DNA from: Magallana gigas
Taxonomy: Eukaryota
Assembly (NCBI RefSeq): GCF_963853765.1
Contig: NC_088856.1
Span: 16,988,001 to 17,052,000, forward strand
Reading direction: 5' to 3'
Length of the DNA: 64,000 nucleotides
Positions 14,770 through 26,628 of the stretch are shown piece after piece (position 1 is the first letter of the stretch; every line of letters starts with the position of its first letter). Both the position numbers and the translations under genes were made by a program. The notes beneath the pieces are model-generated. The model saw nothing but the letters and a program-made list of their open reading frames with translations. It had not been told where the DNA came from and made no database searches.

Positions 14770-17700
14770 TCACACATGCGTATCGTCGTCTTCCTCTATA
14801 TTTGTGATGAAGTACAAAGGATTTTCATTCATGACCGCTGAATCTTGTCCAACTGTGCAGTCTAGGTACGGATCGTCGGCCATATTGGATTTTTTGTTGT
14901 GGCGACCGTTCCTTTTTCTGTAATTGCATGTAAAATATATAGGCATGTCGGAATTCTCCAAAGATTAACATGAGTCAACGATCCATTTAGATGTTAAATT
15001 TAGATCAAATGATTGTCAATAATATATATGACAAACAGGGACATGCAATTTTTATCATTTTGAAGCTTCACGAAAGCAGACATGTATATATACTAGTACT
15101 TACTTTAATTTAAGGAATACAATAATGACGATGACTACCAAAATGACACCCCCGCCTGCACCTGCTAGAAGAGGAATGTTATTAGTCACCCAGTCCTGAA
15201 ATTAAACAGGGATCAAATGTACCTATTTTTAATAAAAACAAAAGGAAAAAACCCACAAATTACAATACATATTACATTATATTACACATCTGGTATAATA
15301 TTCGCAGTAAATATAATTTCTGTGTTACAGGTGGTGAACTTTTTTCTTTTCAAAATACAAAATAAATTATATATACAGTGTTTGTATCATAAAATGAATC
15401 TTATTTGCAAGTTAGATTTTATGTTAACATAAAATAAATCAATTTGGATTTTTTTAAACTTGCACATATATTACAAGCCTGCATTTTCTACAACTGTCAA
15501 TAAACTTCTATTCGCGTGAAATAAAATTTCGCTTCACGGGTATCGTGAGAATATTATAGTCATAAAAAAGTCCTTTATTTGGAAGGCTTCGTTGCGAACA
15601 TAAGTGTATCGAATCGTAATCATGTTTATCACATGTCAATCGCAACATCAAGTCGCTGCTAATATATATTAGTTTACAATATTTATACTTTTGTTGAATA
15701 TTCTTGCTAATTCACCCTTAATAATAGTTTCTCCACCTATCGGCACATTTTCTTAATACTGAGTTTACTACAAAGCAACTCTAATTGGTCTAGGACAAAA
15801 TCATAGACCCTATAGTTACTTTCGGGCATTGTTTATGTCCTCCATCAGAAATTATATTACACAAACCTCGTTTTCTCCAGATTTCTTTAACTCTTTCCCT
15901 ACAAGCTCAAACGGAAAAATTGCGCCCACTTCCTTTGCTGACATCTTGTTTAATCTTGTCTTCAAGTCTCCATTCTTTAGCATCTTGCCATCACAAACTA
16001 CCGGAACTTCGAAATCCGTTCTTCCATTGCTGTCAGGAATGTACAAAATTATTTCATTTCACTTAAAACAATCAAGATGACGTTAATTTGGTAATTTTAC
16101 AAGACAAGTCAGAATGAAAAATTATGTAATAAATATTTTTACAAAACAGGTCAGAATGAAAAAAAATGAAATGAATATTTTTACAAGACAGGTCAGAATG
16201 AAAAAATATGAAATGAATATTTTATTCACTCCACTTTTAATAGTGTTTTTTTTTTTGGTAAAGGTATCTTGTTTCTTGCTTTTATATACTGAAAAATAAA
16301 ATGCCTGTGTCACATTCCATCAACAATTCAATGAAACATTTCGATTCATGGCTGTTGTTGTGAGGGATTTACATATAAAATGTTTACATTTTTATCTGGA
16401 AATTAAATATACATTACCTATACGACAAAACATGGTCATAAAGTAAAACGGTAATGTCATGGCAAATCGTGGAGCATATCTGTTGTAGAGCATCTTTTAT
16501 TTTGCTGACGTCTGTTTCTGTCACGTGTCCATTGAACTCCAGAAGAACCTTCTCTTTAATGACGACAGCTGAATAATAATGAACTGATTTGTTTATCTTT
16601 ATAGTTATACCACAACCAGTCAAACTTGGTTTCATATAATTCAGAACAAGAACTTGGTTGTAATGAACATTTTAAAAAAGATTTAAAATCTGTGGAATCA
16701 TCATTGTTCGTTGGGGACCAATGTTCGTGACTTTCGTGGGTAACCCTTGCTGCTATGCAGTCATGGCTTTTTGAAATCAAAAAGCAACAAATTTGTCGGG
16801 CATTAAAGCCGTGTCTTTGTTAAACATGTATGTGAAAATTTACCTTGAGACTAGCGTCATTCTTAACTGGATACTTTTATCAAACGGAAATTAAAGTCCG
16901 CAGTTTTGTTAAAATGGCTCCAATACCGAAGGTTCTTTGAAAAAGACAAGGTAAAAAACATACCTGTTGATGTTTTTCCTTGCATTATCTCACAGGAAGT
17001 GCCCTGGTGTCCATCTTGGCATTTGCAAGTGTACGATCCCGGGGTATTATAACACACCCCAAAACCTGAACATTTCTCACGCGCACACTCATTTATATCT
17101 TGGTCACACTTCAAACCACTCCATCCATCCAAACACTCGCAGTGGAACGATCCCTCTAAATTGGAGCAGGATTTAGCGTGCACACACGTGTTAGCTTGGC
17201 ATTCGTTGATGTCTTTGTCGCAACGTCGCCCTCTCCAACCCTGCAAACATGAACAGTTGTACCCACCTGCAAAGTTGTTACATGTTGACCCATGAAGGCA
17301 GACCTCACTGTAACACTCATTGACATCCTGCTCGCATCGTTTGCCTGTCCACGCTGGGGGACAGTCGCAGTGGGCACTACCAAGGCTGTTTCTACAGCTC
17401 CCGCCATTTTCACACGACAGGATGTTGTTTTGACATTCGTCTATATCATCAGTGCATGCTTTGTTTTTCCAGCCAGGTTTGCAATGGCATGAATAACTTC
17501 CGTCCGTGTTCGTACAGTTATAACTGTTTTGCTTGGAACACAGTTTATCAAAAGCACACTCGTTTAGATCCTGATCACAAGATTTACCCACCCAACCCTC
17601 TTGGCAATGACAATTATATGATCCAGGAGAATTCTCGCAGAGGGTCACATGTCTACATGTTCCTATCGAACATTCATTTACATCATCCTCACACGAAGGT

Positions 17701-20700
17701 CCGGACCAATTTGGTGGACACAGGCACTCGTAACTTCCAACAGAATCCCGACAAGTACCTCCATTTTTACAAACGTTGTTTAAGCACTCATTTATATTGG
17801 TGTCACAAGTTGCACCGGACCATCCGCGGTCACAGTTACATAGAAACCCACCATCTGTGTTTGTACAGTTTCCATTGTTGCATATGTTGTTTGATAAACA
17901 TTCGTCAACATCAGAGGAGCAGTCTGGTCCTTGATGATTCGGAGGACACGAACATTCATAAGAACCAAGTTTGTTTATGCAAGTACCACCATTAAGACAG
18001 ACATCTTTTCTATTGCATTCATCAATATCGTTTTGACACTTGTCGCCTTCATATCCGGAATTACACGCACAATGAAAACTTCCAAATAAGTTAGTGCAGT
18101 TACCATGCCCAGAACAAAAACCGGGATTTGAGCATTCATTGAAATCCAGTTGGCAGTTATCACCTGTCCAGTTGGAAAAACAAGAACACCTATAAGATCC
18201 ATCTCTATTCTGACAGGAACCTCCATTTTGACATGGACTGTACAATACACATTCATCTATATCTCTATTACAATGAGTTCCATTCCAGCCTACGTCACAG
18301 GAGCAGGTGTAAAAACCAGGTGTGTTTGAACAATTTCCATTACCGTTGCATGGATCATTGAGGCATTCATCAATGTCTTCAGTGCAATTTTTCCCTGACC
18401 AGTTTGACGGACACACACATACATAGCCACCAATCACATCGATACAAGCCGCTCCATTTTTACAAGGGGTGTATATCGAACACTCGTTGACATCGCTTTC
18501 ACAGTTTCTACCGAACAATCCAACCGGACACGTGCATTGGAAGGTTCCATTCAGGTTACTACACGTGCCATTGTTTTGACAAACGTTCGAAAGACATTCA
18601 TCAATGTCCTGCTCACAGTTTGTTCCCGACCATCCGGTCCTACACGAACAGGTAAAGTTTCCGTCTGCCAGGTCAAAACACGTCCCTCCATTCTTACAGG
18701 GTGTTTTTGTGCATTCTCGAATCTTGCTTTCACATTGATTCCCGGTATAGCCTGTGAAATGTATAAAATTTTAGAGGTAAGATGAAGGTAAGTACGGCAT
18801 TTATCAAACAAAAGAAATTTTTTCATACGAAATATATTTTATTTCATGCGTCCTTCATATGATAAGTATATATACAAACTGTAGAAGAAAGATGTTCGCA
18901 ATAGAAATGGTTGATTAATTAGTCGGCATTCCAAACTACCAACCCACTAACCGTCTTGACAATATAAATATCCAGCCCCTGAACAATTCCCATGTGTAGT
19001 ATCGACACAATATCTAGAGCACTCGTCTCCATAGAAATGATCGTCACAGATTAGGTTTCCATAATCATTGCATGATCCGTTGTTTTTATCAACGCAAAAT
19101 ATGGTGCATTTAGGTCCAAAATAGTGTTGGTCACATTGCAGCTGTCCCGTGGCATTACACCTCCCATGGCTGCCATTGACGTATCTTACGCAGTTCTTTG
19201 AACAGTCGTCTCCATAGAAATGAGGATCACACAGAACTGTTGCTATTATTGTAGCTCTAATGGGAAATAATGAAAAGAAGAATTTGATTCATGCAAAATG
19301 ATCTTATGATTTTCTGGATTTACTCATTTTATAAAACATGTTAAGAAATCTACGTATAATTCTCAAAATCGATAAGTTAAGTTTCAATATTTTGAATTCC
19401 AATTTCTTTTAACTTTGTTAAATATGAGAACCTCAACCATTTGGCGCCGTTTTTTAAAGCGCTAAGCATAGCTCAGCGCTTTATTGTCGTTAGACTTCTA
19501 TTTCCGGTGCAAGGAATAACTGCCCTCTATGAGCAGAAATATAATCATTTAAACTGGTAAGAGGTATAGGGAACCAGTTATCTGGGTGACGAAAATGGCC
19601 GAGTAGATACGATTGGTTTGCGGGGCTTACGTACATCAGCACGGGATGCTACGCAGTGATGAAAAAATATAGTGCGTATTCAGAAGCTAAAATATAGAAA
19701 AATAAAATCGATTCTTTGCAAGAAAATGTCAAAAACTGTGATAAATTACTGTTCAAAAGGTATAATTTGTGATTTTAACATATCTTTTTTCAGGCAAGTA
19801 TCCATATACAAGTCGTGTTCAGCTTTAATTCACATCATCTTCAGAAAGTAACATATATTTAAAGAAATCTGGCCTTCGATACTTAAATTGATATTCATTA
19901 AACATAAACCAAAATTTCAATAAGGCTCATTTCCGCCTACGCCTACGCTTGCACACAGTAACTTTTCTTAGAACCAAGCTAGGTTAGCGCTTTTCAGTAC
20001 TTTCAGTACTTTGATTTTTTATTTTCAGTAGTCAATGTATATATTATCAAAGTTCGGTGTTCCTTATTGCCTGTTTAAATCTTAATTTTTTTGGGTTTTT
20101 ATTTTACATGAAAAAAAAAGTCTAGAGGGATACCTGGTCAAATAATTGTAGAGCGTCGTAGACGATGGCTTTGCAGTAGTCGTTTGGGTTATGCTGAAGA
20201 GTTCTTGCGCTAACGTACGATTTCTCTGGTTACCATCGTATATTAAAAACTCAACCAATGTGTTACTCTGTAATTTTAAGTAGAGTATAATCAGATATCA
20301 GTTTGTTCTACAACAATCGAATAGTGTATATGCTAGTAAAACATAAACATTCTATTTAGCACTGCAATCAACACAAAAACAAATTATAAGCGTGTATTTA
20401 CCCCATTCCAGTTAGGAATATCTATGTGTATTGGATTTGGTAAGGAGCCAACCATCGAAAGGTTCTGGAAATTGAACGTTTCGTGGTTCCCAAGTGGCCC
20501 ACTCTCGTACCGTTGTTTAATAGGGCGGTTTGTACCAAACCTATTAAACATTCAATATGCTTATCAAAATTGTTCATCACTGCTTATAGAATGTATTTTC
20601 CATTGAAAAATAGTGTTTTATTTTCTAAAAAAATATGTACGCGTTATTAGTGCATGTAAATGCAAATATATGCCTAAAGAATCGGTCTACAGTATTTTTT

Positions 20701-22007
20701 CAGTATGTGTAAAAAAAAAACTTGTAGTAAAACATTAACCAAACATTGAATTCGGAGCGTATATTGTATATGAACGGGGAGCAAAGGATACCTAAGAAAT
20801 TCACAAAAATTATAGCCCCTTTTTCTACTCTGGCCCTTTCAAGTAGTTATTGCGATTCTAAGGTACCTCGAGCTCATAAGGTACCTCATACAGACCTGAG
20901 GTTGACCTCTATGGACGGGTCGCAGACGATGGAGCAGTTTCCGGTGCTGCGCGTGTCTGTCCCGCAGCAGTAGTGGGTCGTTTTATTGTTACCGTCCAGG
21001 TACTGGTGTAGCTTGTTGGAGTAGGACAGTAGTTTCAGGCTTACCACCACATGGTTCCCCTCTATCTGAATGTGAGAGAGACGTTTTATACGGTGGCCCA
21101 ATATGGCATCATTCTCGAGTTTATTTTGAATAAATAAACATAGTATGGCATACCCGGGTTTATTTTAGATTTTTTTTGGGGGGGGGGGTGATTTTCAAAA
21201 TATTCAATCCTTTTCAAGATTTTTTTTAATTTTTAATTTCTAAAAAAAACCATCCAAATGCATAAACCCATACTTTTTCATACGAATTTGTGACTATTTA
21301 CATAGTCAATAACACCTTGAAGTTGCCAAATCTGTGTTTGAAAATCTGAGAGATTTTATACTGTAACCAAATGTGAGAATTATTTATTATTTTAAATGAA
21401 AAACAAACATAACATAAGGTAAGGCATCCCACCAATTTATGGGTTTTTTTAAGAATTGGTGAAAATTTACTATAATCATGTACATACTGGTACGTGAAAG
21501 TAGCTAAAATATTTTAAAACGTTTAAGTTTAGATATGTTGGTTGGATTTTTTCTTTGGAGTGGGGTTGTAGTAGTTTTGTTTTATAATTTGAGGAGATCA
21601 GACTTAATTATTATTTTCTTTAATTTACCAATAACAATTTATCTTCTAAATTTTATAATTTTCAACAACAGACAAAACGAGCATAGGCCTTTAATGCAAC
21701 AAACTGTTAATCTATAACAAATATCTATTAACAAAGTATCTATTCCACATTCACTTTTAAATATTTACAATACATATATCTTTTAATTTCTTCTGTGAAT
21801 TAAACTAATTTTTTTTAAAATGATAATGCTTTTGGTAATATTTTCTTCAATGATTTTTCAAAATAATAACGTAAAATATTAAAGTGCACAGTTAGAATAA
21901 ATTCTTCTATAACATTATATAAGTTACCTGGTCAAAGTACTTACTATCGTAAATTCCTCAGCAAAAAGCATCAAAACACAAATTGTTATTCTTATTAGGA
22001 CAGCCAT
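14770..22007 (-). CDS. Delta/Serrate-like type I membrane protein: signal peptide, C2/MNNL-like domain, 3 tandem DSL-like repeats, 15 (mostly Ca-binding) EGF repeats, ~100-aa stalk, TM helix, short tail; ~1050 aa
   Basis: Ten exons (minus strand): 22007-21945, 21065-20896, 20540-20402, 20267-20134, 19256-18952, 18751-16964, 16568-16418, 16029-15867, 15195-15104, 14917-14770. All GT-AG, phases match, total 3153 nt. Signal MAVLIRITICVLMLFA; MNNL-like VSLKLLSYSNK..CC..C..CDP..NPIHIDIPNWNG..VEFLIYD; TM IPLLAGAGGGVILVVIVIIVFL followed by KLKKR. Confidence 0.88.
16096..16222. repeat. Intronic minisatellite, 3 copies of ~43 bp
   Basis: TTTTACAAGACAGGTCAGAATGAAAAAA(T)ATGAAATGAATAT repeated. Confidence 0.8.
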
Positions 22008-22964
22008 GACAAAGTTCTCGATCGTTTTACATAAAGTATTTTATAAAGATCTCTTTTTTTCAAAATGTAAAGTATTTATAAAGATCTCACTTTTTCCAGA
22101 TGTAACTATTATCCGCGTTCACATGATAACAAAACAATGGGTGAACTATAGTCTAATAATCTGTTGCAGGGTCGGCCTATTGACAGTTAATAACAATGCA
22201 TTTGATAACAAAAGGGAGAGAATATTTGTGTACATACATATATACATTTATGTTATGTCATCCTTACGCAGTTATTTTGGTAGAAAACTTAAATAAGTTT
22301 GTTCAAAACGTTGCAGCTCGACAGAGTGGAAAAAGATGAAAATGAGGAAAAAGTCGCAAAAGCAGTTTTATATTTCATATTCATTAATTTTGTAGTGCAT
22401 TTATAAACATTACTCGCCGCGTGCTTTCTTGCTTTCATGAAGTCTTTATCCAGTAAATGGGATGCATATTAAATTCATCTGTTAAATAAGATGAGAGGCA
22501 AAAAATCGTTAGGTACATTCTTTGTTTTATTGTATGACACATATTTATTTGATTGTTTTCCCCACATATTTGTAGCAACGTATGATCCACAAATGATTTA
22601 CATATTTGAATGGATATGAATATGATATACATAATTATGATTTGCATACAAAGTTCATATTAATTTATAATTATCATAATCATCTACACTTTGTATTACT
22701 AGAAAGGGGGGTCTAAGCGGGAAATGTACGTACATCGTAATCTGGTTTGAGAATAATTGTTCTCCTTTTTGTGCAGTTTAATATCTATGTAAGTTTTTAG
22801 TTATGTTGGAAAACTATTTCGTTTTTTGGAAAGAAGGATTGTGGTTTTTGTTTACTGGTCAGCACTAGCAAAAGACCCATCCAAGAGAGGGTTTGAAATT
22901 CGCGCGTCTACAGATAAAGCATTGATATAAACAATACCTTCGGATAACAAAACTCAGTCAAAAC

Positions 22965-25900
22965 ATGGGGGCCTACAAACTACTAGTGAAAGGCGCGAAG
23001 CAAGTCGTTACAGTACGCAATGATGAGAACATACGGGTTCTACGGGGGAAAGAGATGCAACATGTAGACATCATCAAAGCAAAGGGCGAGGACGGCGTTA
23101 GCATCCTCGTGGACAGGTGAGATTTCTTAGGTAACTGGTACAGGTAAATCGTTGTTGGTTGGGTTGTCACCACGTAATATAAATAAACACTCTTATCGCG
23201 TGGTCCTAGATTTGGAGCAAGCTAGCTTGATAACACGATTTATACACCTTGTTCGTATTAATTCATGCACGGATCTAGAAGGGGAGAAGAGGTCAGGGGG
23301 TCCGGACCCCCCCCCCCCCCCCCCAGGCAAATTAAAATTTCTTTAAATTGACAGATTCCCCTGAGAACTCAAAATACCGTTGGATCCCCCCCCCCCCCCC
23401 CGGAAAAAATTTCTGGATCCGCGCATGTTAATTCACTGGTCATTTACATACATGTACCTTTCTCTTTCTATGGATTTTTTTATTTAATCAACCGTTGCTA
23501 TAAAGATTTCTGTTTTATCTATTATATCAATAAATATATGTAAATTCGGGGGTTTATTTAAAACAAATAATTATACAACTATTTCTTATTTACCTTAAAA
23601 TCACCGGTTGCATTTATTCAATAAATGCCATTCTCCTATCAATGTCATAAAAATACTAGAAAAAATATAATGCATCTAAAATAACAGAAAATTCTGAAGT
23701 AAATAAACACGTATTCCATTGCATGAAAATAATATAATAAACTACAAGTGCTGTTCTGGCAGAAAAACTATAAATAATTGTACCTGTAGTATAGAAGAAG
23801 GGCTATGCAAGCAGAGAAATCGCTCCATATCGTTTATACATGTAATAGGAGAGCTCCAATTACGAAGCCATAAGTTCTTGACAGGATGATGATGATTCTA
23901 AAAAAAATGACCCCAATTAGACATCAATATTTTGGGGGGTTTGTCTTGCAGTAATGGTAGGATAGAATTCATCGGTCTGGACTCGGAACGAGTGTCTAAG
24001 TATCCCAGGAGTGAGGACGAGGCGGAGCAAGTTATAGAGGCCGAGGGGAAATGCATTGTTCCTGGTCTAGTGGATGCTCACACCCATCCAGTATGGGTCG
24101 GGGATCGAGTCCATGAATTTGCAATGAAGGTTAAGTTCTACCATTTTGACCAAGTTAATTTATACCATTTAGTACGAATTTTCCAATTACTCTGTACTTT
24201 TCTTACCTTACTAAATGTAGTTTCATCAAGGTGAATACAATAAAATTACATGTACATGTAAATATCTTTTATTTTTCAAACGGTTTTACGGTATAATTAA
24301 TTAATTTCATTTCTTATTAAAGTTAGCAGGTGCTTCATATATGGAGGTACATGAAGCAGGAGGAGGTATTCATTTTACAGTGGAAAATACAAGGAAAGCT
24401 TCTCAAGACGAGCTGTACGTCAGCTTCAGCAAACGTTTGTATGACATGATGTCGGCAGGAACTACCTGTGTGGAGTGTAAAAGTGGATACGGTCTTGACA
24501 CAGAGACGGAGATAAAGATGCTGAAGGTGATTGAAACAGCAAAGCGAGAGCATCCACTGACGATATCCTCAACATTCTGTGGAGCTCATGCCATTCCGAA
24601 GTATGAAAAGGGACCTTTTTATCTCCCAAGTAGAGAGAGAATGTGTCTAAAGATGTCCAAACATTCGATTTAGGATTTAGTTTAATATAGAGCGATTACA
24701 GTCCAATGATCAAGAAATTTTTAAAACCACATTGTCTTAAACTATATTGGAAAATTTTGTATCGAGCAAAATCTAATACTGATTCTTACTTGAACAAACA
24801 AATGACGATCATAAAGAAAATATCTTCTAAAACATCTAGTATTAATAACAAAAACAAAAATTGTAAACTATATGTATATAATTTTCATCACATTTAGGGG
24901 ATCTACGGCTGAAAAAGCTACAGAGGACGTAATAAATAACCAACTACCCGCAATCAAACGTCTTATGAAAGAAGGTCAGCTCCATGTCGATAATATTGAC
25001 GTCTTTTGCGAAAAGGGTGTGTTCGATTTAGAACAATCCCGTGCTATACTAGAGGCGGGAAAAGCTGCCGGATTACAAATTAATTTTCACGGGGATGAAT
25101 TACATCCTCTTAATGGCGCAAAGGTACTTTGTTTCTTTTAAGCTGGTTATTTTAGATGTTAATCAGTCGAGATGATTATCTGTGACATTTTTGGACACAA
25201 TCTTCTTCTTAAAAAAGATGACAAATATTGACTGTGTCGTAGCCACGGTGAGGCATTTGATAGATACTGATTTAGCAGCAAGGGAAAAATGCTAAACAAA
25301 GGAAACGGTCATATGAAAATGTGCATTAATATGTATTGTTTCTTAATTACCGTATTCATATCTGGTTGTAATGCGATAATTAATTACTATAATGAATACT
25401 TACATCGTAAAGGTACGAATTTATCTCGAAGACATACATGTAGTAAAAGTTCATGAATTCCTACGATAAATTTGATTGTATTAAATATTACTTGATATTA
25501 TAATAGCCGAAACTGCGGGTTAAAGAACTTTAAGATTTTGAATGCCTAAGGAATGGGTTTGACGAGACTTATTTTATTGTTGTGGTGTTTTCCATAAAGA
25601 CATTATTAATAAATTTTAGATGGGTGCAGAATTAGGGGCCCTTGCAATTAGTCACCTAGAGGAGATTTCTGAGGAGGGTATCGCTGCCATGGCTAGTTCC
25701 GGGTCAGTGGGCGTGGTGCTTCCTACCACCGCCTACATCCTGAGGCTGAGGCCCCCACCGGTCAGGAGGATGCTGGAGGCGGGGGTGGCGGTGGCGCTGG
25801 GCTCAGATTTTAACCCTAATGCTTACTGCATGGCAATGGTAAGAAATACAGGTGTTAGTGCCGGGGAGGGGCGTTCATTATGTAGAGCTCGTTCTATAGT

Positions 25901-26628
25901 GGCAAAAATTGATTAACAATAGAAAAAACAATGCAATATATGTTATGTGCAATTTAATTCGTAAATGAATGTGCCATAGACACCAGCAGACATTATATAT
26001 ATTTATCTCATAATGAAAAAAGATACCCTGTACCTTATTGATTGGATTTGGATATATTTTATGCGTCCTGGAATGGCGATTTGACAGTTCCCCTATAATT
26101 ATGGTTACATACAATATGATTAACATGGTTAGTGAAAACTCTATAAGCTTATTACTATATCTGTACTCTGTAGCCCACGGTGATGCATTTAGCGTGCGTG
26201 TTGCTGAGGATGACGATGCCCGAGTCGCTGATAGCCGCCACCCTTAATGCTGCGTCCGCCCTCGGCTTATCGAAAGATTATGGATCCTTGTCACGTGGAA
26301 AATACGCTGATTTGGTCATCATTGATGCTCCAAGGTCAAAAAAATTATTTTTTAAGTTTTAATATACAGAACCAGTCATAATGCAAAAAAAATTTTATGA
26401 GTACCGGTACCTGCAACGACAAATGCTTGTTGATGTGCTTCTGTTATAACTTTAGCAATTTTTAAAATATGTAAAGTATTATTAAGACTAAGAAATTTAT
26501 GTCTATATTTTTCTGTATTTTGCAGATGGGAGCATCTCATTTACCAGTTTGGATGCCATGACAAAATTATCGATTACGTCATCAAAAAGGGTCACATTGC
26601 TCATACAAAATATGAATGTTGTGGTTAA
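22965..26628 (+). CDS. AMDHD1: Probable imidazolonepropionase (amidohydrolase domain-containing protein 1), 7 exons, ~438 aa
   Basis: Exons 22965-23116, 23952-24129, 24323-24600, 24898-25123, 25620-25838, 26174-26334, 26526-26628 with consistent phases. Motifs PGLVDAHTHPVW, ECKSGYGL, DVFCEKGVF, FHGDEL, SHLEE, ALGSDFNPNAY, RWEHLIYQFG. Confidence 0.96.
23264..23427. mobile_element. Poly-C/G-containing MITE in AMDHD1 intron 1; related partial copies at 41867-42037 and ~42868-42907
   Basis: TIRs CATGCACGGATCTAGAA / TTCTGGATCCGCGCATG; flanked on both sides by TTAATT (possible 6-bp TSD). Confidence 0.75.

What the first reader, a model, noticed from the sequence alone, without database searches (positions are those of the whole stretch)
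18952..21065. Notch-ligand-like protein with three tandem DSL repeats
Seen: after a C2/MNNL-like domain, exon 19256-18952 encodes CDPHFYGDDCSKNCVRYVNGSHGRCNATGQLQ / CDQHYFGPKCTIFCVDKNNGSCNDYGNLI / CDDHFYGDECSRYCVDTTHGNCSGAGYLY / CQDGYTGNQC. That is three C..(F/Y)(Y/F)G..C...C.....C...G...C units. Established: canonical Delta and Jagged have a single DSL domain whose RDD.FGH loop contributes to Notch binding. Here that loop is replaced, and shortened in repeats 2-3. Inference: a lineage-specific non-canonical ligand, decoy or adhesion receptor. Multi-DSL genes may already exist in lophotrochozoan annotations; I cannot check that.
Basis: partly seen in the sequence, partly recalled or inferred. 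Interest (0 to 1): 0.7.

Follow-up and report, generated by a model that had tools for sequence, protein, structure and literature searches.

The report
Oyster triple-DSL Notch-ligand-like membrane protein
This is a real, expressed and conserved oyster gene for a membrane protein built like a Delta/Jagged Notch ligand but with three interlocked DSL modules instead of one; multi-DSL proteins are already reported, so it is an uncharacterised variant, not a new kind of system.

Summary
Exon 19256-18952 (minus strand) encodes three DSL-type units. Pfam DSL is the only family above its cut-off: 44.2 bits for the exon, 33-34 bits per complete unit.

RNA contigs from three runs in two studies define a 10-exon gene. 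All of them include this exon, and no skipping joint was seen. The product is 1050 aa:
- signal peptide
- MNNL/C2-like head (profile comparison, 94% probability)
- three DSL units, each sharing a 10-residue hairpin with the next
- 15 EGF repeats, 14 of them calcium-binding
- a stalk domain whose scallop counterpart folds like SEA
- a transmembrane helix
- a tail with NPLY, ending in THV

The exon is conserved without gaps in three other species, with all 13 cysteines and both splice sites kept. pN is 0.09-0.23 against pS of 0.23-0.93. A paralogue lies on contig C8, and two scallop proteins share the architecture.

The Phe that Jagged-1 needs for Notch binding is absent, and conserved N-glycosylation sequons occupy the loops. 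Function was not tested. My best guess is a non-canonical Notch-pathway ligand or modulator. A Notch-independent adhesion or endocytic receptor is nearly as likely.

Multi-DSL proteins are already published (Gazave 2009; He 2021). This gene is absent from He's C. gigas list. The scan also noted another DSL-EGF gene 1.5 Mb away (s1-361762).

The parts
21945..22120 (-). Exon 1: 5' UTR and signal peptide. The ATG is at 22007; the first 19-22 residues are hydrophobic.
   Evidence: 176 letters of the X1/X5 RNA contigs lie beyond 21065 and match 21945-21974 exactly. ORF assembly and hydropathy.
20896..21065 (-). Exon 2: first third of the MNNL/C2-like head, with the CC-x8-C-x3-C motif.
   Evidence: RNA joints with GT..AG ends. 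Pfam MNNL E 0.034, profile positions 5-47. hhalign 94.4%.
20402..20540 (-). Exon 3: middle of the C2-like head.
   Evidence: RNA joints. Aligns to the C8 paralogue (37% identity) and to the MNNL-positive gene at C7:39.89 Mb.
20134..20267 (-). Exon 4: end of the C2-like head.
   Evidence: RNA joints. The orthologous exon in L047 is 53% identical.
18952..19256 (-). Exon 5: the three overlapping DSL units. This is the finding.
   Evidence: Pfam DSL 44.2 bits, 3 stretches. Present in RNA contigs of X1, X4 and X5. AF2 pLDDT 91.2. Orthologues align without gaps.
19136..19231 (-). DSL unit 1 (32 aa). The 10-residue C3-C4 loop carries the N-G-S sequon.
   Evidence: 33.1 bits against Pfam DSL when the next hairpin is included. 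The sequon is conserved in 4 of 4 species.
19049..19135 (-). DSL unit 2 (29 aa). Its first hairpin also serves as the C5-C6 hairpin of unit 1. The loop has 7 residues and an N-G-[ST] sequon.
   Evidence: 34.4 bits, profile positions 1-43 of 46. Conservation.
18962..19048 (-). DSL unit 3 (29 aa). The loop has 7 residues and an N-C-S sequon. Its closing hairpin, CQDG|YTGNQC, spans the intron.
   Evidence: 20.3 bits when truncated by the exon end. A home-made HMM aligns it, with the hairpin, to the full DSL.
16964..18751 (-). Exon 6: closing hairpin of unit 3 followed by 15 EGF repeats. 14 have the calcium-binding consensus and 8 have the O-fucose consensus.
   Evidence: Pfam EGF_CA 304 bits, 15 stretches. 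Motif count. RNA contigs.
16418..16568 (-). Exon 7: first half of the juxtamembrane stalk domain.
   Evidence: RNA joints. Aligns to scallop P0157, whose domain model gives SEA domains as best structural matches.
15867..16029 (-). Exon 8: second half of the stalk domain.
   Evidence: RNA joints. Orthologous exon in L044.
15104..15195 (-). Exon 9: transmembrane helix (aa about 978-1000) followed by basic residues.
   Evidence: Mean Kyte-Doolittle hydropathy up to 2.9 over 19 aa. RNA joints.
14770..14917 (-). Exon 10, coding part: cytoplasmic tail with NPLY (an NPxY motif) and C-terminal THV, plus the stop codon. The 3' UTR continues below 14770.
   Evidence: The loose end of the X1 contig matches 14888-14917. 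ORF. The scallop homologue's tail also carries NPLY.

Best explanation
SHOWN. Window 14770-22120 (minus strand) is an expressed 10-exon gene for a 1050-aa type I membrane protein. In order it has: a signal peptide; an MNNL/C2-like head; three DSL modules; 15 EGF repeats (14 calcium-binding); a stalk domain homologous to a scallop domain that is predicted to be SEA-like; a TM helix; and a 49-aa tail with NPLY, ending in THV. The DSL modules are interlocked. The C1-C2 hairpin of each unit also serves as the C5-C6 hairpin of the unit before it, so the period is 29-32 aa rather than about 45. The gene belongs to a small bivalve family, with one paralogue on contig C8 and two scallop proteins, and it is under purifying selection. 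INFERRED. The three modules form a stiff, N-glycosylated rod that holds the C2 head two modules further from EGF1 than in Delta or Jagged. The Phe that Jagged-1 needs to bind Notch is replaced: Gly at the F207 position, and the Asn of a conserved sequon at the F206 position. Loops 2-3 are cut to 7 residues. The protein therefore probably does not dock on Notch EGF11 in the canonical way. My committed guess is a non-canonical Notch-pathway ligand or modulator, in the manner of Dll3 or DNER. It would be held at junctions by its PDZ-type C-terminus and internalised through NPxY. Identity and anatomy: about 0.9. Notch-pathway role: about 0.45.
For: Gene model and inclusion of the exon: a 3741-nt RNA contig in X1 and matching contigs in X4 and X5, with all nine introns GT..AG. 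DSL identity: Pfam. AF2 model pLDDT 91.2; its top Foldseek PDB matches are Jagged-1, DLL1, DLL4, Jagged-2, Serrate and Delta (E 7e-6 to 4e-4), and the best VIA Z of 5.8 is to DLL4 168-274 and Serrate 230-337. MNNL head. Order of domains as in Delta/Jagged, TM helix, THV end. Purifying selection and conserved Cys, splice sites and sequons. Loop lengths against the genome's own canonical DSLs. F207A abolishes Jagged-1 binding to Notch-1: PMC3888931. HMM alignment placing N and G at the FF positions. NPLY and the juxtamembrane domain shared with the scallop protein XP_021341192.1.
Against: No binding or signalling test was possible. In the unit tree, all nested units (this gene, the paralogue, scallop proteins, giant arrays) separate at 100/99 support from canonical DSLs, including the oyster's own Delta and Jagged. 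They may therefore have a different partner. Structural Z scores are modest (under 8), and SCARF1 and Tie2 EGF arrays score nearly as well. The EGFs after the DSLs are ordinary Notch/fibropellin-type cbEGFs, not the atypical EGF1-2 of Delta/Jagged. A SEA-like stalk plus NPxY is more typical of adhesion or endocytic receptors than of known Notch ligands.
Confidence: 0.45

Rival explanations
1. A Notch-independent adhesion or endocytic (scavenger-type) receptor. On this reading the DSL-type units and cbEGFs only build a rigid, glycosylated stalk. The C2-like head binds lipid or another ligand, and NPxY recruits PTB adaptors for uptake, as in the CED-1/MEGF10/SCARF or LRP classes.
For: The nested units cluster with the giant bivalve DSL arrays, not with canonical DSLs. 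SCARF1 (8hna) has the highest TM score by query (0.53) among PDB hits, and scavenger receptor class F models appear in AFDB. The NPLY motif is conserved between oyster and scallop. The scallop homologue's SEA-like stalk resembles those of mucins, adhesion GPCRs and protocadherin-15. The canonical Notch-contact Phe is lost.
Against: The N-terminus is homologous to MNNL, a domain known only from Notch ligands. The C2-DSL-EGF-TM order and the PDZ-type end match Delta/Jagged. Pfam reported neither EMI nor laminin-type 8-Cys EGF above cut-off. Pfam DSL beats every EGF model.
Confidence: 0.33
2. A bona fide trans-activating Notch ligand. The C2 head plus DSL unit 1 would still engage Notch EGF11-12 despite the altered loop, and units 2-3 would simply lengthen the ligand.
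For: The full ligand architecture is present and under purifying selection. Unit 1 keeps the longest loop, with a conserved His and Gly near the canonical G-H position. From my own knowledge, some nematode DSL ligands also lack the FGH motif yet signal.
Against: Position F207, essential in Jagged-1 (PMC3888931), is Gly here. A sequon conserved in 4 of 4 species places a probable glycan on that face. The tail has NPxY, not the features known for Mib/Neuralized-driven endocytosis; that comparison is from my own knowledge and was not tested.
Confidence: 0.15
3. Not a functional feature: a chance Cys pattern, a pseudogene exon or an annotation artefact.
For: None found. Raw-read depth in the one polyA run sampled (X20) is very low.
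Against: Spliced RNA contigs come from two studies. There is an intact 1050-aa ORF. In three other species the exon is conserved without gaps, with pN far below pS. The fold prediction is confident.
Confidence: 0.02

Closest known systems
Delta/Serrate/Jagged Notch ligands (e.g. human Jagged-1, DLL4; the oyster's own genes at C6:11.58 Mb, C6:2.91 Mb and C2:45.85 Mb)
   Same: Signal peptide, MNNL/C2 head, DSL, EGF repeats, single TM helix and a short tail with a PDZ-type C-terminus. Best structural matches.
   Different: Three interlocked DSL units instead of one. The F-G-H Notch-contact loop is replaced or shortened and carries sequons. Ordinary cbEGFs follow directly, rather than the atypical EGF1-2. 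There is a SEA-like stalk and an NPxY motif. No VWC domain.
Tandem-DSL proteins: Nematostella genes with 1-11 DSLs and one MNLL+3xDSL gene (Gazave 2009, PMC2770060); bivalve 'DSL or DSL repeat' genes without EGF (He 2021, PMC8166818); ctenophore and cnidarian proteins P0130, P0126 and P0152
   Same: The same 29-32-aa, 4-Cys unit, repeated head to tail and scored by Pfam as DSL. The units group together in the tree. Some of these proteins also have a C2/MNNL head and a TM helix.
   Different: Those proteins lack the long cbEGF array, and most lack the stalk domain. Here there are only three units, fixed in number and length across the four oyster sequences compared.
Scallop proteins XP_021341192.1 ('eyes shut-like', Mizuhopecten yessoensis, P0157) and XP_033745666.1 ('fibropellin-1-like', Pecten maximus, P0153)
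   Same: Several nested DSL units (about 4 in P0157, several in P0153) followed by EGFs. P0157 also shares the juxtamembrane domain, the TM helix and an NPLY tail (27% identity over 153 aa). These are probably the same family.
   Different: The numbers of DSL units and EGFs differ. P0157 has a Ser/Thr-rich stalk. Both records are partial or unnamed, and neither is characterised.
Divergent or DSL-less Notch ligands such as Dll3 and DNER (from my own knowledge, not tested here)
   Same: EGF-rich type I membrane proteins whose DSL is degenerate or absent, and which modulate Notch non-canonically.
   Different: No sequence relationship beyond the shared domains was tested. They have no tandem DSLs and no SEA-like stalk.
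SCARF1 / MEGF10 / CED-1 scavenger receptors
   Same: A rod of atypical EGF-like units, a TM helix and an NPxY-type tail motif. SCARF1 is a good structural match.
   Different: No EMI domain. Pfam laminin/PEAR1-type EGF models fall below their cut-offs while DSL passes. The N-terminus is MNNL-like.

Membership tests
Delta/Serrate/Jagged (DSL) Notch ligands | Secreted N-terminus and a single-pass type I membrane topology | tested here: met
   Hydrophobic residues 1-22 and 976-1006 (hydropathy windows), with basic residues after the second stretch.
Delta/Serrate/Jagged (DSL) Notch ligands | N-terminal MNNL/C2 domain (PF07657) | tested here: met
   Single exons fall below the Pfam cut-off (14.1 and 17.6 bits against 22.5). 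The profile of this gene plus its paralogue aligns to canonical MNNL at 94.4% probability, E 8.6e-8, 83 columns, with shuffles at most 8%. The CC-x8-C-x3-C motif is in register. The C2 fold was not predicted.
Delta/Serrate/Jagged (DSL) Notch ligands | DSL domain (PF01414) above the gathering score, placed between MNNL and the EGFs | tested here: met
   44.2 bits for the exon; 33.1 and 34.4 bits for units 1 and 2 (cut-off 24.2). Every EGF-type model is below its cut-off.
Delta/Serrate/Jagged (DSL) Notch ligands | [quoted passage not shown] | tested here: not met
   Loops have 10, 7 and 7 residues against 11 in the genome's canonical DSLs. N and G sit at the FF positions. F207A abolishes binding (PMC3888931).
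Delta/Serrate/Jagged (DSL) Notch ligands | EGF repeats after the DSL, beginning with the atypical EGF1-2 | tested here: inconclusive
   There are 15 EGFs. The first is a regular 6-Cys EGF and the next 14 are cbEGFs. EGF_DL_JAG matches lie inside the array, not at its start.
Delta/Serrate/Jagged (DSL) Notch ligands | Binds and activates or inhibits Notch | not tested
   No complex prediction was sent. The C2+DSL fragment is spliced and has no usable reference, and the report does not claim binding.
Bivalve tandem-DSL repeat proteins (He 2021, 'DSL or DSL repeat' group) | Head-to-tail DSL units of the short 4-Cys type | tested here: met
   The units group with the array units at 100/99 support against canonical DSLs. 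Pfam DSL scores the arrays too.
Bivalve tandem-DSL repeat proteins (He 2021, 'DSL or DSL repeat' group) | No EGF domains | tested here: not met
   15 EGFs follow the DSL units.
SCARF/MEGF10/CED-1 scavenger receptors | N-terminal EMI domain and laminin/PEAR1-type EGFs | tested here: not met
   No EMI match on exons 2-4. EGF_PEAR1L scores 20.4 against a cut-off of 37.5, and EGF_laminin 9.4 against 21.
SEA-domain membrane proteins | Beta-alpha-beta-beta-alpha-beta juxtamembrane domain; G/SVVV autocleavage motif in some members | tested here: inconclusive
   The model of the scallop homologue's domain (pLDDT 81) has as best matches Gpr126 SEA and MUC16 SEA5 (both Z 8.9), then MUC16 SEA, CELSR1 and protocadherin-15 MAD12. 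Foldseek found nothing significant, and Pfam SEA does not match. No GSVVV-like motif was seen. The oyster domain itself was not folded.

The most novel reading that the evidence does not exclude
The 29-32-aa hairpin-plus-loop unit may be a self-standing, rod-building repeat. It occurs from ctenophores to bivalves, in arrays of up to about 86 units. On this reading the canonical 45-aa DSL is just one and a half such units. In this bivalve family the rod is joined to a C2 head and to a SEA-like membrane-proximal domain, which has the same fold class as the Notch HD domain and other force-gated proteolytic switches (PMC6586460). The protein could then itself be a mechanically shed receptor, not a ligand.
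Probability: 0.15. Interest if true: 0.65.

Novelty: new variant of a known kind. Interest (0 to 1): 0.4.

Why it matters
Notch ligands are defined by one DSL domain, whose conserved face docks on Notch EGF11. This family keeps the ligand's head, order of domains and membrane anchor. It triples the DSL in an overlapping register and drops the key Phe, yet the arrangement stays conserved between species whose synonymous sites have almost saturated. That gives a natural test of two questions: what the DSL scaffold does apart from Notch docking, and how far a ligand's geometry can change. It also shows that the published census of C. gigas DSL genes (PMC8166818) missed at least two expressed or conserved members. 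The gain is modest. Multi-DSL proteins are already on record and no function is shown here.

Tried and rejected
1. The search for homologous proteins with the EGF exon returned only generic EGF proteins at 46% identity or less. It returned neither the gene's own product nor the orthologues that other tools found.
2. The same tool with the scallop homologue's C-terminal region found only the query itself.
3. phmmer of the spliced N-terminus against 255 fetched proteins gave no hit. Only profile methods detect the MNNL relationship.
No Notch complex prediction was sent, because the report does not claim binding.
5. String searches of He 2021's supplementary DSL sequences for ten motifs of this gene and its paralogue found nothing. 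The genome's canonical DSLs are in that file.
6. Foldseek against PDB with the stalk-domain model gave nothing significant. Only the exhaustive VIA search pointed to SEA domains.
7. The C-terminal part of the C8 paralogue (stalk, TM, tail) was not found by tblastn within 40 kb. Its full architecture is unknown.
8. The readings 'laminin-type or ordinary EGF' and 'exon skipped' were tested and rejected.
9. The unit tree rests on 42 columns. Only five forks are well supported, so no order of duplication is claimed beyond position-specific orthology of units 1 and 2.
Full report
WHAT IS THERE.
The window comes from a 564-Mb animal genome (C4:16,988,001-17,052,000). The genome's canonical DSL exons are identical or nearly identical to the Crassostrea gigas sequences in He et al. 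2021. It is therefore C. gigas or a very close relative.

It has 13 cysteines in three units of C-x3-[FY][FY]G-x2-C-x3-C-loop-C-x6/7. A hairpin, CQDG|YTGNQC, closes the series and spans the next intron.

IS IT DSL?
Pfam DSL is the only family above its curated cut-off on this exon: 44.2 bits against 24.2, in three stretches. EGF_TEN, EGF_2, EGF_laminin, EGF_Tenascin and EGF_PEAR1L all fall below theirs.

- Unit 1, taken together with the first hairpin of unit 2, scores 33.1 bits over profile positions 1-43 of 46.
- Unit 2, treated the same way, scores 34.4 bits.
- Unit 3, cut by the exon end, scores 20.3 bits.

So each unit is a complete DSL only if the C1-C2 hairpin of the next unit is counted as its C5-C6 hairpin. 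The modules are interlocked, with a period of 29-32 aa instead of about 45.

An AlphaFold2 model of the exon, built on a 34-sequence alignment (A1), is confident: pLDDT 91.2, pTM 0.70. It shows a regular series of short beta-hairpins.
- Foldseek against PDB ranks Jagged-1, DLL1, DLL4, Jagged-2, Serrate and Delta first (E 7e-6 to 4e-4). SCARF1 is at rank 15.
- VIA-align gives Z 5.8 to DLL4 168-274 and Serrate 230-337, which is the DSL-EGF1-EGF2 rod. Tie2 and SCARF1 EGF arrays reach Z 4.5.

The structural evidence is supportive but not exclusive.

THE GENE.
RNA-derived contigs from three runs in two studies define the exons. One is a 3741-nt contig. The exons are 21065-20896, 20540-20402, 20267-20134, 19256-18952, 18751-16964, 16568-16418, 16029-15867 and 15195-15104. 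The contigs' loose ends map to 21945 and upward, and to 14917 and downward. All nine introns are GT..AG. No joint that skips the DSL exon was reported.

The assembled ORF is 1050 aa, from the ATG at 22007 to the stop ending at 14770:
- a hydrophobic signal sequence;
- a 147-aa head;
- the three DSL units (aa 178-277);
- 15 EGF repeats, 14 with the calcium-binding consensus and 8 with the O-fucose consensus;
- about 105 aa of juxtamembrane sequence;
- a TM helix (aa about 978-1000) followed by basic residues;
- a 49-aa tail containing NPLY and ending in THV.

THE HEAD.
Single exons give only sub-threshold Pfam MNNL matches: E 0.034 here and E 0.0029 in the paralogue. In each case MNNL is the only plausible match, and both cover profile positions 4/5-47.
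- A profile of exons 2-3 from this gene and its paralogue aligns to a canonical MNNL alignment with the DSL removed. The result is 94.4% probability, E 8.6e-8, over 83 columns. Twenty shuffles gave at most 8%.
- The CC-x8-C-x3-C motif is in register with the oyster's Jagged. It is also in register with a divergent MNNL-positive gene at C7:39.89 Mb.

I accept the head as MNNL-derived. Its C2 fold was not predicted.

CONSERVATION AND RELATIVES.
An exhaustive HMMER search with the exon found 127 proteins. The four best are exon-sized fragments from other assemblies, at 83% and 68% identity. Three of their contigs carry the same exon followed by the EGF exon.

The exon aligns without a gap in all four species. 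All 13 Cys are conserved, as are the ag/gt splice sites and the sequons N-[GS]-S, N-G-[ST] and N-C-S in the three loops. pN is 0.09-0.23 against pS of 0.23-0.93. The EGF exon is 60-89% identical and has the same length in L047.

Within this genome there is one paralogue with the same three-unit exon, a similar head and a longer EGF exon, at C8:20.579 Mb. Two scallop proteins carry several nested units plus EGFs: XP_021341192.1 and XP_033745666.1. The first also shares the juxtamembrane domain, the TM helix and an NPLY tail.

The same unit also forms huge single-ORF arrays in this genome. One ORF is 2593 aa, or about 86 units. The unit occurs behind C2-like heads in ctenophore and cnidarian proteins as well.

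In a tree of units, canonical DSLs split from all nested units at 100/99 support. Units 1 and 2 each group by position across species. The tree has few columns and supports little else.

WHAT IS LOST AND WHAT IS ADDED.
The genome's canonical DSLs have 11-residue C3-C4 loops of the type R-P-R-[ND]-D-x-F-G-H-Y-x. The three units here have 10, 7 and 7 residues. In an HMM alignment, the two Phe positions of Jagged-1 (F206 and F207) are occupied by N and G of the conserved N-G-S sequon. F207A abolishes Jagged-1 binding to Notch-1 (PMC3888931).

The stalk has no Pfam match. A model of the homologous scallop domain (pLDDT 81, beta-alpha-beta-beta-alpha topology) matches SEA domains best in an exhaustive structural search:
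- Gpr126 and MUC16 SEA5, Z 8.9;
- protocadherin-15 MAD12, Z 7.7-7.9;
- Notch2 HD, Z 5.5.

Foldseek found nothing significant for this model. I treat 'SEA-like' as a lead, not a result.

HOW IT MOST LIKELY WORKS.
Shown: it is a membrane-anchored, calcium-stiffened rod with a C2-type head, three interlocked and probably glycosylated DSL modules, and a tail with endocytic (NPxY) and PDZ-type motifs.

Inferred: the extra modules act as a spacer, and the canonical EGF11-docking face is gone. I rank the possibilities as follows.
- A non-canonical Notch-pathway ligand or modulator: 0.45.
- A Notch-independent adhesion or endocytic receptor: 0.33.
- A classical activating ligand: 0.15.

None of these was tested.

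WHAT IS KNOWN.
Gazave et al. 2009 reported Nematostella genes with 1-11 DSLs, and one gene with MNLL plus 3 DSLs (PMC2770060). He et al. 2021 reported that DSL expansion in lophotrochozoans comes mainly from tandem repeats in bivalves (PMC8166818).

He's C. gigas list has eight genes. None of the ten motifs tried from this gene or its paralogue occurs in their sequence file. A full-text search found no functional study of tandem DSLs.

VERDICT.
This is a new, uncharacterised variant of a known kind, of moderate interest.

Noticed in passing
G000:C4:35,621,506-35,628,750 (loci L003-L030); also C4:35,642,030-35,645,737 and C7:50,595,026-50,597,668: Uninterrupted ORFs of 2593, 1304 and 980 aa made almost entirely of the same 30-aa 4-Cys DSL-type unit, in near-identical 180-nt tandem repeats rich in N-x-S/T sequons. 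Pfam DSL scores 80 bits on a 200-aa sample. These arrays are far longer than the 11-17 DSLs listed for oysters in He 2021.
   Followed up: partly
G000:C8:20,578,979-20,579,260 and flanks (L002, L050, L051, L062): A paralogue with the same three-unit DSL exon, an MNNL-like first exon (Pfam E 0.0029) that keeps the canonical F-x-R-I-C-L ending, and a 999-aa EGF ORF. Its stalk, TM helix and tail were not found within 40 kb.
   Followed up: partly
window 19280-20080 (intron 4) and 16690-16750 (intron 6): RNA depth here is 5-20 times that of the exons, with many loose ends, small indels and variant letters. This looks like copies of an interspersed repeat expressed from elsewhere, not part of this transcript.
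   Followed up: no
P0157 residues 548-668 (scallop XP_021341192.1); homologous to window exons 16568-16418 and 16029-15867: A juxtamembrane domain with no Pfam match. Its AF2 model is closest to SEA domains and SEA-like membrane-adjacent domains (Gpr126, MUC16, protocadherin-15, dystroglycan, Notch HD). No G/SVVV cleavage motif was seen.
   Followed up: partly
G000:C7:12.71 Mb, C7:36.13 Mb, C7:39.89 Mb, C4:18.54-18.58 Mb, C4:7.46 Mb, C4:34.51 Mb, C1:42.30 Mb, C5:53.73 Mb: Beyond three canonical ligand genes, the genome holds several divergent MNNL and/or DSL exons. Three MNNL-like hits cluster at C4:18.54-18.58 Mb, near the place of the scan's other note on a DSL-EGF protein without a TM anchor.
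   Followed up: partly
P0130 (Mnemiopsis leidyi KAL5253063.1), P0131 and P0146 (Pleurobrachia), P0126, P0152 (Actinostola): Ctenophore and cnidarian proteins with an N-terminal head, 4-13 nested DSL units and, in P0126 and P0130, a TM helix but no EGF repeats. The nested-DSL rod appears to be ancient.
   Followed up: no
window 11174-11821 (+) and 22965-26362 (+): Neighbouring genes. One is a single-exon 215-aa EF-hand protein (Pfam EF-hand_7, E 1.4e-11). The other is a multi-exon gene with a weak amidohydrolase match, transcribed divergently from the DSL gene; its first ORF starts about 850 nt upstream of the DSL gene's exon 1.
   Followed up: partly
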